DNA of 64,000 nt from Rebecca billardiae RCC1528 (lineage: Eukaryota; Protista; Haptophyta), in the NCBI GenBank assembly GCA_965240325.2, contig OZ251224.1, forward strand, positions 4,340,001 through 4,404,000, given 5' to 3'. Shown piece by piece: positions 1 to 6,033 of this stretch; the first letter of the stretch is position 1, and the number at the start of each line of letters is the position of its first letter. The notes below the pieces were generated by a model, which was not told the origin of the DNA, ran no database searches, and was given only the letters and a program-made list of their open reading frames with translations. Both the position numbers and the translations under genes were made by a program.

Positions 1-416
1 GCTGCGCGTGCCCCGGCCGTGCAGCGCACGAGCAGGCGCCGCCGCCGCTCCACGCCGCGTCCGGGCGTGGCGATGCGCCGACGGGCGATGGGTTCTCTGC
101 CGCTTCCATCCGCGCGCGGCGTCGCGCGGCGTCGGCGATCGCGATCGGCGACGGTCCGAGCGGGTGGCAGGGTCCGGTCCTGTGACCGCACTCGCGGTCC
201 GTGCAGACCGCGGGCGTGATTGATCTGGCCTCCGCAGACTGAGTGATGAGACTATCCGCTGCCACTCCCGAGTCCCGGACTCCGCGGACGGCTCCGTTGC
301 GGACAGTGATCAAGTTCACCGCCACGTATCCTGACGACGGGCGGAAAGTGCTTAAGCCTTAATGCAGCTGCGCCAGTGAGTATCAGAGTTGGCCGAGCCA
401 CTCGGCCCGCGCCACC

Positions 417-1738
417 GGGTGGAATTCCCATTTTCTGGCGCACTTCCGCACTGGGGAGGCGGAAAAGCGTCATTTAATACGCGAATAAGGAATAAATAAT
501 AAAGGGAATATAAAGCGCACGCGCAGTGCGAAGAAATTTTTCCGGGTGTATCCGCGTAGTTATTATGCGAAGCACCCGAGCTGCTGCGAGGCGGCCTGCT
601 TGCGCACGCGGCGTCCCGAGTACCCTCGGGGCTCACCTGCGGCTCGGCCTGCGCACGCTTAGCAAGCTCGCGTGCGGCCTGCACCTTGCCCGCCGCCTCG
701 ACTCTCGAGCAAGAGGATCGACGTATGAGTGAGCGTGTGCCGCCGAGCTGCTGTCCGGCAGCCACCCGCGACTGCAGCCGCTGGCCGCGGTGCCTGGCCT
801 CGGCGCGGCCCCACAGGCTCAGCGCTGTGAGCTCCTCCTCCTTCTGCGCTCCTCCTCCAGGCGTTTGGGCCGCCGCCGCCTTGGCCGCCTCGTCCTCGTC
901 GATCAGCTGAACGGCGGGAGTGATGTCTCTGCTCAGCTGAGTGTGACGTGACAAGCGAGGCGACGAGCGACGGCAGCCCGGTGACCAAGCCGACGAGCTC
1001 ATCGTACGAGCCGTCACGCGTGCGCTCGTGCCGTGTCTGAGCTGGCTCGCGCTCGTACGCCGACCAGGCTTTGCTCGGACTGAACGCGTCTGCTCGGGCG
1101 TCCTTGCGTGTGCGCTTGGACGGCCGCGGGCCGTCATCTGGTCCGACCGCGCGCAGCTCGATCTCGGAAGCGTTGAGCTGCTCCGCGGTTGACTCGCCCT
1201 CTACCTCAGGCTCGACCACGGCAGCAGGCCCCGCAGCAGCCGCCAGATAGCATCGGCAGGGGCCCCTGCGCCACCCGCCGCCGTCCGCACATCGGCCAGC
1301 TTGCCGCACACGCGCTGGACCACGGCTTGACGCGGATGTGGTGCCAGGTCGTCGTGCCAATCGCTTGGCTATCGACAACGGGCACGGGCACCTCGATCAC
1401 GACAACGCCTGTCGCGTAGGCTGTGTAGCGATGTCCGTCCACGACTCCGTCGTGTGTGGACGGCGCACGCCATCGCGGCCGTGGGCGCAAGTGTCTCGTG
1501 AATTGTTTTTTTAATTCACGAATTCGCCCAGCCGCTACATCGAACTCGACAACGGTTGCTTTTACACCCGCGATCTTTTGACTGTGCAAATGGGGCGCCG
1601 CCCCATGCTCAAATCCGAAGAGAACGAAGATGTAAAAGTGTCTGGTCCCTAGATACTGTGCTGTCCGGGTCCCGGTCCGGTCAGATCTGAGCAGCCGGAT
1701 TTTCCGCCCGGACAGGCCAGAAAATGGGATTTTCACCC
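417..1738. mobile_element. Non-autonomous DNA transposon with terminal inverted repeats (~1.3 kb)
   Basis: Left end 417-439 GGGTGGAATTCCCATTTTCTGGC vs reverse complement of 1716-1738 GGGTGAAAATCCCATTTTCTGGC (21/23 identical). Subterminal GGCGGAAAA (468-476) is inverted at 1700-1708. Flanking direct repeat CACC (413-416, 1739-1742), or CCACCG if the ends are taken as 418/1737. Confidence 0.8.
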
Positions 1739-1823
1739 CACCGTACCGTGACCGTGTTCCGACTATAAATAAAAAGTGACTAATTATATATTATTCGTCA
1801 TCATGACAGCAGCTAGTCGTCTG

Positions 1824-1824
<1 letters not shown>

Positions 1825-1916
<92 letters not shown>
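1825..1916. repeat. (TA)46 microsatellite
   Basis: Pure TA dinucleotide run read directly. Confidence 0.98.
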
Positions 1917-1919
<3 letters not shown>

Positions 1920-2219
1920 CATGACGAGAACTGACGATTATCATCATCATATCGTCATCATCAGCCAGCCAGCCAGGCCGCGGGAGCAGTGACGCCTGCT
2001 TGACACTTGACAGCTGAGTGCTGTGGCCTGTCACCCTGACCCTGTGCGCCACAGTACCGCCCTCATCAGTCGCCAGACGGACGCGTCATCGCCGCGTGAT
2101 CGTCGGCGCCGTATGGTGCCTGCGCTCTGCGCGCCCGCCTACGCCATCACTGCGCCTTGCGGTTTGTGCGTGGTCCACTCGTCGGCGCGGCCCTCATCGT
2201 GGTCGCCGCGCAGTTGCCT

Positions 2220-2317
2220 GCCCGATCAACCGGTGTGTCGGTCAGCCGCACGCTGCACCCACCAGGCGGTGGGCCTATGCAGCTGTCGCGCGGAGACGTC
2301 ATGCGACGATGATGGGC
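2220..2317 (-). promoter_or_regulatory. Candidate SECIS element in the 3' UTR of the SelU-like gene
   Basis: Minus strand: helix I GCCC-AUCA-UCG / CGG-U-UGAU-C-GGGC; AUGAC (plus 2298-2302) ... CGAC (plus 2237-2240) GA quartet; helix II GUC/GAC and CCGCGC/GUGCGG; apical stems GCUGCA/UGCAGC and CCCACC/GGUGGG. The AUGA lies about 50 nt after the stop. Confidence 0.7.
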
Positions 2318-2350
2318 GCCGACTCGCGCCACGCCTGGAGCGGGGCGCAC

Positions 2351-3031
2351 TCACGCCAGCGCCTCGCCAACCCCGGCGGCGCGGAGCACGTCCTCCACCT
2401 CCGGGTGGTCGCCGGGGATCTCGTCCGCCCAGCCGAAGAGCACCGACTCGGCGTCGAGCACAAACGTGCCGCCCAGCCGCAGCACGCCCTCGGGCACCTG
2501 GCCAAAGCCCTCGATGGTGGGCATCACCTTGCCCACGTTGCCCAGATACTTGAGCCACGGGACGTCGGTTGGGGCGCGCAGCTTTGCCGTGGGCTCGCCC
2601 TGCTCCCCGATCTTGCCGAACCCCGCCGCCGCGTACGCGTCGAAGGACTCGCTCGCGTCCGCAAACAGCAGCTCGCGCGGGATCTCGGGGTTGTTGTCGA
2701 GGAAGGTGGTCATCTTCTCGGCGTCGCCGACGGTGACCATGACGGGCCCCGCCATGCCGATGGCCTCGAGCGCGGGGCGCTGCTCGGCCATCTCGTTGGC
2801 GAAGCTCCAGCAGTACGGTCAGCCGAGGTGCCTGAGGAAGACGAGCACGCCGCGCTCGCCGAGCGCCTCGTCGACCGAGAGCCGCGCGCCGTTGCAGTCG
2901 ACGAGCTGCCCGGCGCGGATGTCGGCGGTGGCGATGCTGCGCCCGTTCACGATCACGCCGCCGATCGCGGTCTGGCAGGCGATGCCGTGCGACGCCATGC
3001 CGCCGACTAGCGCGGCAAGTGCGGCCGACAT
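2351..3031 (-). CDS. Selenoprotein, SelU/PRXL2 (AhpC-TSA-like) thioredoxin-fold redoxin, 226 aa with Sec at codon 71
   Basis: ORFs 2819..3031 and 2351..2791 are in the same frame, separated only by TGA at 2819-2821: VLVFLRHLG-U-PYCWSFANEMAEQ (UxxC). C-terminal LRLGGTFVL...DHPEVEDVL is typical of the family. SECIS-like hairpin downstream. Confidence 0.88.
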
Positions 3032-3960
3032 CTTCGAGGTCCAGCGCCCGGCGGCCGCGGAGCTTCGCCTTCGGCGTCCTTCCGCCCAGGACGTACGGTG
3101 ATGAGCGGTGACATCATGCGAAGACTGTGGGCTGCTGCGGATGATTTACAATTCCGTGATGAATGATATGGTATAGTAGTACGATGGCGGCGCCACCGCG
3201 CCAGCGTGGTGGCGCACGCAGCCAGTGCATTCGCCAACGCCGGCTGGGGAACGGCGCAACACAGGAGGTGATTGGTGATTTGCTGGCGCACGGAGGTACA
3301 GTCGGACGGAGTAACGTCGGTGAAGAGTTCGGCGAGGCGCGCATATGATCTGCATTGCGGCGCGACGGAGCCGGGCCCGGAGGCACTCCCCGGCCCGAGT
3401 TTGAGTTAGTGGCCGTGGCCGCGCGGTTGCCGCGAATGACTGGCAATGAGCCACGGCACGCGCCCGATTCACTCGAGCGGGACGGATCATCTGACTTGAC
3501 AGTGCGACCGCGCCTGAGTCACATGGGACGTCGCCGCCTGCCCTCCACGGCAACAGCTCCGCTTTAGACTGCGGTTGAGGCCGGTCGTGCCGGTGTCGCG
3601 TCTACTCACTGGGGCAGACGGGCAACATCGGAGCACCTGCCGAGAGCGCATAGTGTGTACCGAAGGCGCTCTGCCTTCGCCAAATGGCGGCCTGCCCACC
3701 GCGCACGTTGTTCCACGTTGCCGGCCGAGCGGGTCCAGCGGAGAGGCGGCGACGACGGCCTCTTGCTGCAGCGCGCTCGCTCGGGCCGAGAGCCTGAGAG
3801 CCAGGCCAAACTGACTACAGCAAAGAGGAAACTTCAGTCCGGCGTGCGGCTGAAACGCACGACACGGCCTGCCCAAGACGGGACCGGACCACACGCCCCT
3901 CAACCAGGGCAAACGCGCCCAACCACTCGCAGCGGGCCGACGGGCGCGCGCGATCTTGCG

Positions 3961-5350
3961 ATGGCTGACGCTGAGAGCGCGTCGGCAGCTGCCGCCTCGA
4001 ACACCGCCGCCGGCGGCAAGCCGCATGGCGGCGGCCCTTCCTCCAACTTTGTGGAGCACGAGCACACCATCACGCCGCGCGGCACCAAGCTGTACAACAT
4101 CTGCGGCATGCGGTTTGAGGTGGACAAGAAGTACGCAGTGAAGAAGGCGGTGGGGCAGGGGGCGTACGGGCTGGTGTGCTCGGCGCGGATCACGGCGACT
4201 GGCGAGGGCGTGGCCATCAAGAAGATCCCCAAGGCCTTCGACGACCTCATCGACTGCAAGCGGCTGCTCCGAGAGATTAAGATCCTGAAGCACTTCAAGC
4301 ACGACAACGTGCTCGGCATCAAGGACATCATGATGCCGCCGTCGAAGGCGTGGAAGGACGTGGTGCGTGCCTTCGGCCTCGCACCGCCTCGCGCGCGCAC
4401 GCCGGGGCGTGGCGTGCTCGGCGGCCGTGGGCCGGCCGCGTGCGCTGATCCATCCAGCAACCGCCCCCGCGCCCGGCCCGCTGCCGGACGGCTCGGCGGC
4501 CGCGCTGCCCCGCTCTCTCGCGCGCGCGCTTGCGCAGTACATCGTCTCCGAGCTGGCGGACACCGACCTGCACTACATCATCCACTCGAAGCAGCCGCTG
4601 ACCGAGGAGCACAACAAGTACTTCCTGTACCAGATCCTGCGCGGCGTGAAGGTAATCCACTCGGCACACGTGCTGCACCGCGACCTCAAGCCGGGCAACC
4701 TGCTGGTGAACAAGAACTGCGACCTGAAGGTGTGCGACTTCGGGCTCGCGCGCGGGATCATGAGGCCGGGCGAGTCCGGGCCGGTGGGCCAGCTCACAGA
4801 GTACGTCGTCACGCGCTGGTACCGCGCGCCCGAGCTGCTGGTCGAGGCGGACACGTACTCGGCGCCCATCGACATGTGGGCGACCGGCTGCATCTTTGCG
4901 GAGATGCTCGGCCGCAAGGCCGTGTTCCCGGGGCGGGACTACCTCGACCAGCTCAAGCGCATCATCGAGGTGTTGGGCACGCCGTCCGACGAGGACATGC
5001 GCGCCATCTCCAACCCGCAGGCCGCGTCCTTCCTGCGCTCGCTGCCGCGCAAGACGAAGCGGCCGTGGAGCGACATCTACCCCAAGGCGACGCCGCAGGC
5101 GCTCGAGCTGCTCGACAAGATGCTCGCGTTCAACCCGGCCAAGCGCATCTCGGTGGTGGACGCGCTCGCGCACCCGTACCTCGCGCAGCTGCACAACGCC
5201 GCGCACGAGGCGACCGCGCCCGCCTTCTCCTTCGACTTCGACCGGCCCGACGTGACCAAGGCCGACCTCACCTCGCAGATCTGGGCGGAGATGCTGCACT
5301 TCCACCCGGAGGCAAAAGACCTGCCCGACACACACACGGAGGACGACTGA
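3961..5350 (+). CDS. Mitogen-activated protein kinase (TEY); exons 3961-4362, 4538-5350
   Basis: GQGAYGLV, VAIKK, HRDLKPGN, DFG, LTEYVVTRWYRAPE motifs; GT-AG intron 4363-4537 joins KDV|YIVSEL. Confidence 0.95.
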
Positions 5351-6033
5351 GGGTGGGGCCGGCGGCGCGCGGCGGTGGGCCGCACGGGCCGAGGCTCCGC
5401 CGCTGGGGCGGGCCGCGCGCTGCGCCGCGCGGCTGGGGCTGCGCTGCGCTTCAGGCCCCCGCCTGTCGACTGTCTCGGCTGCGCTCGCTGTGTGACTCGG
5501 CCGGCGGGTTGCGGTTCGATCGGGCGGCGGCGGCCCGATCGCTGGGCTGTCGGTCCCCGTCAGGATTCGGCAGCGGCTGTGGCTTGCGGTCAAGAGGAGG
5601 CTGCAGCCAAGCGGGCAGCGTGCCCGGAGTCGCCGGGTCGGACGGTGCGGTCGGGCAACGGGTCACGAGCACGCACTCGGAGCATCAGCGCCAGCGCGAT
5701 ACCAGTCGTCCCGAGCGGCGGCGCCAGTGCTGAGCTGTGCTGAGCCTGAGTGCAGCGCGGGGCCGGGCGCCGAGCGCGCTGCCGGCTGCTGGTCTGCGCG
5801 GGCGGGTCATCCGATACTTCCGATAGTTATATAGCAGCTATATTAAATTATTGGGTGATGATTCGCATATCGATTACTTTTTCTTTTAAATACTACGCCG
5901 AATAATAATCTGATTTACACGGTCTTAGAATTAACCCGTGGCTGACGAGGATCAGCAGTGCTCATATGCCAGCGGCTGCTGCGGGCAGCGGCGTCGGCCG
6001 TGGCGCCGTGCCCGCGAGGCAGAGGGTCCGCCG

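What the first reader, a model, noticed from the sequence alone, without database searches (positions are those of the whole stretch)
2351..3031. Hidden selenoprotein: in-frame UGA in a UxxC redox motif splits the ORF track
Seen: FLRHLG-TGA-PYC, with the frame continuing 155 codons to a real stop. The UGA sits exactly at the first Cys of the CxxC motif of SelU/PRXL2 (AhpC-TSA_2) proteins, the established position for Sec in this family. Standard gene callers would truncate the gene or invent an intron here.
Basis: partly seen in the sequence, partly recalled or inferred. Interest (0 to 1): 0.8.

Follow-up and report, generated by a model that had tools for sequence, protein, structure and literature searches.

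The report
Algal selenoprotein U-like gene, UPYC

Summary
On the minus strand, 3031..2351 is one frame of 226 codons, with TGA at 2821-2819 in ...VFLRHLG-TGA-PYCW... and 155 codons before the terminal stop.

- **Base call:** the TGA is not an error. Three independently assembled public read sets carry it.
- **Coding signal:** GC3 is 0.96 upstream and 0.95 downstream of the TGA, against about 0.68 in the flanks.
- **Homologues:** eight contigs, five from JGI samples whose proteins carry MMETSP transcript names, have TGA at the same codon. Nine database relatives have Cys there (CPYC). Eleven have a spurious 'W'; three were checked and are TGA.
- **Truncation:** 194 of 214 family entries start after the motif.
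- **SECIS:** a SECIS-like hairpin (AUGA 2302-2299, ACA bulge, GA 2239-2238) lies 48 nt past the stop. All nine 3'UTRs have one.
- **Machinery:** the genome has tRNA-Sec, SepSecS, SelD/SPS and eEFSec.
- **Family:** the fold and profile point to PRXL2B. Feature search points to AAED1/PRXL2C.

SELENOU is among the commonest algal selenoproteins, so this is a new member of a known kind. The scan had already noted this gene's SECIS (s1-343787) and another SelU gene in the same genome (s1-353048). There is no RNA or protein evidence from this organism itself.

The parts
2351..3031 (-). Whole coding sequence: a single exon of 226 codons (Sec at codon 71) plus a terminal TGA stop at 2353-2351
   Evidence: Translation. 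GC3 is 0.96/0.95 on the two sides of the internal TGA against 0.68 in the UTR. An in-frame stop lies upstream of the ATG.
2822..3031 (-). N-terminal piece, 70 codons: a short hydrophobic leader, then the beta strand VLVFLRHLG that leads into the redox motif
   Evidence: 47% identical to the N piece of MMETSP transcript L006, E 1e-16. It aligns with full-length homologues.
2819..2821 (-). In-frame UGA, read as selenocysteine (U71), the first position of the UPYC motif
   Evidence: The same column holds Cys or TGA in homologues. The TGA is present in three independent assemblies.
2810..2812 (-). TGC codon for Cys74, the second (resolving) residue of the UxxC motif
   Evidence: codon list. PYCW is invariant in the family alignment.
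2354..2818 (-). C-terminal piece, 155 codons: the rest of the thioredoxin-like AhpC-TSA_2 domain, including the GGTFV...PGDHP motif
   Evidence: PF13911 at 23.5 bits. 118 homologues. The GGtfv/PGD block aligns to PRXL2B.
2214..2326 (-). SECIS-like hairpin in the 3'UTR: helix I, AUGA 2302-2299, a helix II of about 9 bp, an unpaired (G)ACA at 2286-2284, two apical stems, and the GA partner at 2239-2238 (alternative 2243-2242)
   Evidence: Constrained folds. The same architecture is found in the nearest homologues L006 (ACA) and L009 (AAG), with compensatory changes in the first three pairs of helix II. 9 of 9 homologue UTRs have a hit against 3-26% of shuffles. Rfam SECIS_1 does not detect it.

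Best explanation
A single-exon gene on the minus strand (3031..2351) encodes a 226-residue thioredoxin-fold oxidoreductase of the SelU/PRXL2 (AhpC-TSA_2) superfamily. Its active-site motif is U71-P-Y-C74. The UGA at 2821-2819 is recoded to selenocysteine. A SECIS hairpin in the 3'UTR (core 2302-2238) recruits the Sec-insertion machinery (SBP2, eEFSec and Sec-tRNA[Ser]Sec) to the ribosome at that codon. The second UGA, at 2353-2351 and only 48 nt before the SECIS core, ends translation. The selenolate at the N-terminus of helix 1 is the attacking residue. It reduces a peroxide or disulfide substrate, forms a selenenylsulfide with C74, and is regenerated by a thiol reductant. Shown here: the frame, the conserved TGA, the Sec/Cys pairing, the Sec machinery and the family fold. 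Inferred: that the SECIS functions, the catalytic cycle, the substrate and any targeting role of the leader.
For: - **Frame and coding signal:** one frame with one internal TGA. GC3 is 0.96 and 0.95 on its two sides against 0.68 in the UTR.
- **Base call:** the TGA is present in three independently assembled read sets that differ from the window only outside the gene.
- **Conservation:** the same codon is TGA in 8 of 8 readable homologue contigs, five of them from JGI samples whose proteins carry MMETSP transcript names, all reading VFLRH[LM]G*PYCW. It is Cys in nine CPYC homologues. Both sides of the TGA are conserved.
- **Truncation in databases:** 194 of 214 family entries start after the motif, with a median length of 144.5 aa, as expected for calls cut at the UGA.
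- **SECIS:** a SECIS-like hairpin lies 48 nt after the stop. Its architecture is shared with the nearest homologues, with compensatory changes. 9 of 9 UTRs have a hit, against 1 of 9 reverse complements and 3-26% of dinucleotide shuffles.
- **Machinery:** tRNA-Sec at 72 bits with anticodon TCA; SepSecS at 357 bits; SelD in three exon pieces; eEFSec GTPase plus euk_SelB_III plus eEFSec_4th adjacent on C23.
- **Paralogues:** two other AhpC-TSA_2 genes in the genome also have TGA at the first motif position, UFFC and UPLC.
- **Family:** PF13911; PRXL2B by profile at E 0.01 with the motif aligned and by fold at E 4.7e-8, TM 0.74-0.78; ESM clusters AAED1/PRXL2C at 0.95.
Against: - There is no RNA or protein evidence from this organism. 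The only run offered by the reads tools (X1) does not cover the TGA. The three Logan contigs are probably genomic DNA.
- Rfam SECIS_1 finds nothing here. It also misses all eight homologue SECIS candidates, so it appears blind to these elements.
- My own SECIS descriptor is loose and was partly designed after seeing the candidates. It gives 65 hits in 128 kb of this window and hits 25% of shuffles of this UTR. The SECIS argument therefore rests on the comparison across species.
- The SECIS has ACA where the canonical motif is AA.
- PF13911 is below its cut-off for the window's C piece alone (23.5 against 27).
- SBP2 and PSTK were not sought.
Confidence: 0.9

Rival explanations
1. The gene is a pseudogene or carries a recent nonsense mutation (TGC/TGT to TGA), or the TGA is an assembly error. 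Translation then stops at codon 71.
For: A single base separates TGA from a Cys codon, and Cys forms of the family exist. There are no transcript data for this organism.
Against: The TGA is in three independent assemblies. The same codon is TGA in eight homologue contigs from other organisms. GC3 of 0.95 is fully kept over the 155 codons after the TGA. There are no other disruptions. A SECIS-like element is present.
Confidence: 0.03
2. The real product is the 146-aa protein that starts at Met81 (ATG 2791), as databases annotate it. The upstream 70 codons are a uORF or leader.
For: Gene callers produce exactly this ORF (P0001), and most database relatives have this length.
Against: Such a product would lack the first beta strand and the whole redox motif of the thioredoxin fold. 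The N piece is conserved at the protein level and has coding GC3 of 0.96 in the same frame. Full-length Cys homologues run continuously across the site. Gene callers cannot read through UGA, which explains the truncated entries.
Confidence: 0.03
3. The UGA is read through without selenium, by near-cognate Trp/Cys/Arg insertion or a reassigned code, so the protein is full length but not a selenoprotein.
For: Eleven database entries show W at this position.
Against: In the three cases checked at the DNA level, those W residues come from TGA codons. The same gene ends with UGA as a true stop. The genome has a complete set of the Sec markers tested. The position is the catalytic Cys column, where Trp would abolish redox chemistry.
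Confidence: 0.02

Closest known systems
Selenoprotein U (SELENOU) of algae, fish and birds; Cys paralogues PRXL2A, PRXL2C (AAED1) and PRXL2B in mammals
   Same: Thioredoxin-like AhpC-TSA_2 domain. Sec or Cys at the first position of a U/CxxC motif just after the first beta strand. A C-terminal GG..V...PGD block. A SECIS in the 3'UTR. Wide occurrence as a Sec form in marine algae (PMC7539508, PMC2375036). The SELENOU1/2/3 = PRXL2A/C/B nomenclature is from PMC13134290.
   Different: The motif is UPYC in the context FLRHLG-U-PYCW, not the RRPG-U-xxCR type seen in this genome's own paralogue L038. The Pfam score is only marginal (23.5-28.5 bits), whereas the two Sec-containing paralogues (L037, L038) score 58-80 bits. 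ESM features place it nearest AAED1/PRXL2C rather than the SELENOU1 branch, which holds all vertebrate Sec forms (PMC13134290). The subfamily placement was not resolved by a tree.
Human prostamide/prostaglandin F synthase PRXL2B (PDB 9us9, 9usa)
   Same: It is the best fold match of the modelled Cys homologue (E 4.7e-8, TM by target 0.74-0.78) and the only sequence-level PDB hit. Its CvvC aligns to the family's (U/C)PYC.
   Different: Only 16-20% identity. It is a Cys protein, not a Sec protein. The algal protein has an extra insertion of about 40 residues (the low-pLDDT region 140-190 of the model). There is no evidence for a prostaglandin substrate.
AhpC_b, a UxxC selenoprotein reported from Thalassiosira oceanica (PMC7539508)
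   Same: An algal selenoprotein with an AhpC/TSA-type domain and a UxxC motif.
   Different: AhpC_b was described as having only prokaryotic Cys homologues. The family here has hundreds of eukaryotic relatives. No AhpC_b sequence was available, so identity with it could be neither shown nor excluded.

Membership tests
Eukaryotic selenoprotein gene (UGA-Sec recoding) | In-frame UGA aligned with Cys (or Sec) in homologues | tested here: met
   CPYC in nine homologues and TGA in eight homologue contigs at the same column
Eukaryotic selenoprotein gene (UGA-Sec recoding) | Protein-level conservation and coding signal on both sides of the UGA | tested here: met
   N piece 47% identical (E 1e-16) and C piece 58% (E 7e-63) to L006. 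GC3 is 0.96/0.95
Eukaryotic selenoprotein gene (UGA-Sec recoding) | SECIS element in the 3'UTR (AUGA/GA quartet, helix II, unpaired A motif) | tested here: inconclusive
   The quartet, a helix II of about 9 bp and an ACA bulge lie 48 nt after the stop, with homologues sharing the architecture. However, Rfam SECIS_1 is negative, my own descriptor has a 25% chance rate on this UTR, and ACA replaces AA
Eukaryotic selenoprotein gene (UGA-Sec recoding) | Genome encodes the Sec machinery | tested here: met
   tRNA-Sec, SepSecS, SelD/SPS and eEFSec with its two specific domains. SBP2 and PSTK were not sought
Eukaryotic selenoprotein gene (UGA-Sec recoding) | Selenium actually incorporated at the UGA | not testable with these tools
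   Needs 75Se labelling or mass spectrometry
SelU / PRXL2 (Pfam AhpC-TSA_2, PF13911) | Match to PF13911 above the gathering score | tested here: inconclusive
   The window's C piece alone scores 23.5 bits against a cut-off of 27. The read-through protein could not be submitted. Full-length Cys homologues score 27.5 and 28.5 bits
SelU / PRXL2 (Pfam AhpC-TSA_2, PF13911) | Thioredoxin/peroxiredoxin-like fold closest to a PRXL2 protein | tested here: met
   AF2 model of Cys homologue P0024 (pLDDT 70.8). The top Foldseek hits are PRXL2B 9usa and 9us9. This was tested on a 43%-identical homologue, not on the window protein itself
SelU / PRXL2 (Pfam AhpC-TSA_2, PF13911) | U/CxxC motif at the end of the first strand, with Sec at the first position | tested here: met
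   The UPYC column aligns with CvvC of PRXL2B. Paralogues L037 (UFFC) and L038 (UPLC) have TGA at the same position
SELENOU1 / PRXL2A branch specifically | Phylogenetic placement within the SELENOU1 clade | not tested
   No named PRXL2A/B/C sequences were retrieved (one search returned only the UPYC subfamily). ESM features point to AAED1/PRXL2C instead

The most novel reading that the evidence does not exclude
The FLRHLG-U-PYCW proteins form a separate branch of the SelU/PRXL2 superfamily in haptophyte and ochrophyte algae. This branch is mostly Sec-containing and is closer to PRXL2C/AAED1 than to SELENOU1. Sec use in the superfamily would then not be confined to the SELENOU1 branch, as it appears to be in animals. 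Most members are recorded in public databases only as truncated proteins of about 140 aa with no recognised function.
Probability: 0.35. Interest if true: 0.4.

Novelty: new member of a known kind. Interest (0 to 1): 0.3.

Why it matters
The main value is for annotation. The gene should be called as a 226-residue selenoprotein, not as a 146-residue fragment. The same correction applies to most of its roughly 200 database relatives. Eleven of those relatives instead carry a false Trp at the Sec position. With two further Sec-containing SelU paralogues and a complete set of the Sec markers tested, the gene adds to the picture of large selenoproteomes in marine algae. It also provides another natural SECIS with ACA in place of AA, and it shows that Rfam's SECIS model misses these algal elements.

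Tried and rejected
- **Rfam:** scans of 1-6000, of 2200-2350 and of eight homologue contigs gave no SECIS hit. RF00031 over the whole genome gave one sub-threshold hit elsewhere. I take this as a lack of sensitivity, not as absence.
- **Covariance model:** MAFFT could not align the eight homologue SECIS candidates in register, so no model was built and the count of structure pairs was not run.
- **Reads:** the only run offered (X1) holds contigs at 2143-2386 and 2870-3038. These are identical to the window but do not cover the TGA.
- **eEFSec search:** the best bacterial-selB matches were wrong. L018 is an organellar-type EF-Tu, L021 is HBS1-like and L024 is IF2. The real eEFSec was found with PF21208 and PF21131.
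- **Paralogues:** a search of the genome with the C piece found only the gene itself.
- **Named relatives:** a profile word search meant to reach named PRXL2 proteins returned only the same subfamily.
- **Supplement search:** the supplement of the algal selenoproteome paper has no 'PYCW' string.
- **Not done:** the large representative-protein search was not used, because the protein was not left open.

Full report
**Observation**

The gene lies on the minus strand. The plus strand reads TCA at 2819-2821, which is TGA on the coding strand. Translating window:2351-3031:- gives MSAAL...VLVFLRHLG, a stop, then PYCWSFANEM...GEALA and a stop. That is 70 codons, TGA, 155 codons, TGA. The mechanical ORF list splits this into a 70-aa ORF (2819..3031) and a 146-aa ORF that starts at the next Met (2351..2791). 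The 146-aa ORF is what protein databases hold, as P0001. ATG 3031-3029 is the first ATG after an upstream in-frame stop.

**Is the TGA real, and are both sides coding?**

- GC at third codon positions is 0.96 in the N piece and 0.95 in the C piece, in the same frame. The 3' flank shows about 0.68 and the 5' flank about 0.63 in every phase.
- Three Logan assemblies from three different runs carry the locus. L034 and L035 span window 4828..1894/1916 at 99.9% identity, and L036 spans 2831..1928 at 100%. All read ...CTCGGCTGACCGTAC....
- The few differences from the window lie at 4385-4654, outside this gene. These are therefore not copies of the same consensus.
- The contigs run collinear across the intergenic region into the neighbouring gene. 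I infer they are genomic DNA rather than RNA.
- The one run offered by the reads tools (X1) covers 2143-2386 and 2870-3038 only, so it says nothing about the TGA.

**Comparative evidence**

The C piece finds 118 relatives, most of about 140 aa. I fetched DNA for nine of them.

- In eight, extending the called ORF upstream in frame runs through a single TGA, in the context (V/I)(V/I)FLRH(L/M)G*PYCW. Five of these contigs come from JGI samples whose proteins carry MMETSP transcript names (L006, L026, L027, L028, L030), so in those organisms the mRNA keeps the TGA.
- The ninth (L009, genomic) changes frame upstream and was not resolved.
- The full-length relatives P0013, P0024 and P0028 have Cys at that column (ACPYCW).
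- Among the 214 family proteins retrieved in two searches, 9 have Cys and 11 have 'W' at the position. For P0005, P0008 and P0017 I checked the DNA, and the W is a TGA.
- The other 194 lack the motif altogether and have a median length of 144.5 aa. That is what truncation at the UGA would produce.
- The window's N piece is 47% identical to that of transcript L006 (E 1e-16), and the C piece is 58% identical (E 7e-63).

This is the classical Sec/Cys-pair signature, with conservation on both sides of the codon.

**SECIS**

Rfam's SECIS_1 finds nothing in 1-6000 or in 2200-2350. It also finds nothing in the eight homologue contigs, and it gives only one sub-threshold hit in the whole genome. Its silence is therefore uninformative.

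A constrained fold of the 3'UTR gives the following element:
- helix I;
- AUGA at 2302-2299;
- a helix II of about 9 bp (3 bp, a 1-nt bulge, then 6 bp);
- an unpaired GACA, with the ACA at 2286-2284, 12 nt after the AUGA;
- two further stems with a tetraloop;
- the GA partner at 2239-2238 (alternative 2243-2242).

The two nearest homologues have the same plan. L006 has a 12-nt arm followed by ACA. L009 has a 12-nt arm followed by the canonical AAG. The three pairs next to the quartet read GUC/GAC, GCC/GGC and ACC/GGU, so two of the three pairs change on both sides.

I applied a simple descriptor: AUGA, GA, a single hairpin, at least 8 paired bases in each arm, and helix I of -8 kcal or better.
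- It hits all nine 3'UTRs within 300 nt of the stop.
- It hits 1 of 9 reverse complements and 3-26% of dinucleotide shuffles.
- It is loose, with 65 sites in both strands of this 64-kb window, and it was partly shaped after I had seen the candidates.

For the window alone the hairpin is only suggestive. The nine-fold recurrence is what carries weight. MAFFT could not put the elements in register, so no covariance model was built.

**Sec machinery**

- **tRNA-Sec:** G000:C12:287885-287971, 72.2 bits against a cut-off of 47. ARAGORN calls it tRNA-SeC with anticodon TCA.
- **SepSecS:** C22, 356.8 bits.
- **SelD/SPS:** C23:1192671-1193941, in three exon-like pieces of 29, 88 and 110 bits.
- **eEFSec:** the best selB-like hits turned out to be an organellar-type EF-Tu, an HBS1-like protein and IF2. 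However, C23:743190-743987 (selB GTPase, 147 bits) is followed on the same strand by euk_SelB_III (742646-742987, 72.8 bits) and eEFSec_4th (742397-742597, 72.9 bits). Neither of those families rings in any of the 14 prokaryotic controls. That is an eEFSec gene.
- SBP2 and PSTK were not sought.

**What the protein is**

- The C piece matches PF13911 (AhpC-TSA_2) at 23.5 bits, below the cut-off of 27. The piece lacks the first strand and the motif.
- Full-length Cys homologues reach 27.5 and 28.5 bits, with weaker AhpC-TSA and Redoxin matches.
- A profile of six full-length relatives finds one meaningful PDB sequence, human prostamide/prostaglandin F synthase (PRXL2B, 9us9), at E 0.01. The alignment puts rhl(a/g)(C/U)PyC over rrfgCvvC, and GGtfvv..Gd...PGd over GGLLVV..GD...PGD.
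- An AlphaFold model of P0024 has mean pLDDT 70.8 and pTM 0.71, with a thioredoxin-like strand/helix order. Its best Foldseek matches are PRXL2B (9usa E 4.7e-8; TM by target 0.74-0.78), followed by Sco, Tpx, BCP/PrxQ and TlpA proteins.
- The language-model search puts it nearest clusters named AAED1 and peroxiredoxin-like 2C (score 0.95).

The genome has three other AhpC-TSA_2 genes.
- L037 reads VVAFFRSFG*FFCQ.
- L038 reads VLVLRRPG*PLCR.
- L039 has no CxxC.

So this alga has three Sec-containing members of the superfamily. The one in this window is the most divergent from the Pfam model.

**Mechanism**

By analogy with PRXL2 and peroxiredoxin-like proteins, U71 at the start of helix 1 attacks the oxidised substrate. 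C74 resolves the intermediate as a selenenylsulfide, and a thiol reductant recycles the enzyme. This cycle is inferred, not shown here. The substrate is unknown.

The terminal stop is also UGA and lies 48 nt before the SECIS core. From memory of the deiodinase spacing work (Martin, Harney and Berry, 1996), a UGA needs roughly 50-110 nt or more before the SECIS to be decoded as Sec. That would fit this second UGA acting as a stop. I did not check that paper here.

**Comparison with what is known**

- SelU was described as a selenoprotein of fish, birds and unicellular eukaryotes. It was found in Ostreococcus (one gene) and Thalassiosira pseudonana (two genes) (PMC2375036).
- In a survey of 36 algal genomes, SELENOU is among the four Sec proteins present in more than half of them. 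With GPX it is one of the two largest families in the authors' database. The haptophyte Emiliania huxleyi has 96 selenoprotein genes, including clustered SELENOU genes (PMC7539508).
- The human Cys paralogues are SELENOU1/PRXL2A, SELENOU2/PRXL2C and SELENOU3/PRXL2B. In vertebrates, and in the invertebrates sampled, all Sec forms fall in the SELENOU1 branch (PMC13134290; PMC3316567).

The present gene is therefore a new member of a known kind. Which branch of the family the UPYC proteins belong to remains open. It is also open whether they are the 'second SelU' of diatoms, or related to the AhpC_b of T. oceanica. My profile search returned only the subfamily itself, largely from diatoms (Cylindrotheca, Attheya, Fistulifera, Cyclotella).

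**Organism**

Earlier notes of the scan call the organism a haptophyte (s1-358026). I did not test that.

**Limits**

There is no transcript or protein evidence from this organism. The SECIS has not been validated by a dedicated program. The structure model is of a homologue 43% identical to the window's C piece, not of the window protein. The two pieces were searched apart, and scripts only displayed the frame with '*'.

Noticed in passing
window 2351-2353 (minus strand): The gene's true stop codon is also UGA, only 48 nt upstream of the SECIS core. One mRNA therefore uses UGA both as Sec (519 nt before the SECIS) and as a stop.
   Followed up: partly
L037 (G000:C5:804805-805173), L038 (G000:C13:368273-368614), L039 (G000:C5:1710809-1711465): Three further AhpC-TSA_2 genes are present in the genome. 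Two have TGA at the first motif position (FRSFG*FFCQ and LRRPG*PLCR). One has no CxxC at all.
   Followed up: partly
P0005, P0008, P0017 and eight more database proteins: Public protein entries of this family carry Trp at the Sec position (GWPYCW). In the three cases checked, the DNA has TGA, so a gene caller translated TGA as Trp.
   Followed up: partly
L005, L006, L009, L026-L030 and window 2200-2350: Rfam SECIS_1 (RF00031) detects none of nine SECIS-like elements of this algal family, even with E up to 10. The model seems blind to these algal SECIS forms.
   Followed up: partly
window 1822-1925: A long (TA)n microsatellite lies about 430 nt downstream of the gene. The L034 and L035 Logan contigs run into it and break off there, and L036 ends just short of it. 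It produces spurious Rfam miRNA and snoRNA matches.
   Followed up: no
window 4385-4654: All differences between the window and the independent assemblies L034 and L035 (3-4 single-base changes) cluster here, in the 5' part of the neighbouring plus-strand MAP-kinase-like gene. The stretch is probably an intron or an allelic region.
   Followed up: no
G000:C23:742397-743987 (minus strand): An eEFSec gene: a selB-like GTPase domain followed by euk_SelB_III and eEFSec_4th. SelD/SPS lies on the same contig at 1192671-1193941.
   Followed up: partly
L009:1086-1816: The closest genomic homologue (57% identity) has its N-terminal and C-terminal parts in different frames. The cause could be an intron or a frameshift near the motif. 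Its SECIS has the canonical AAG.
   Followed up: no
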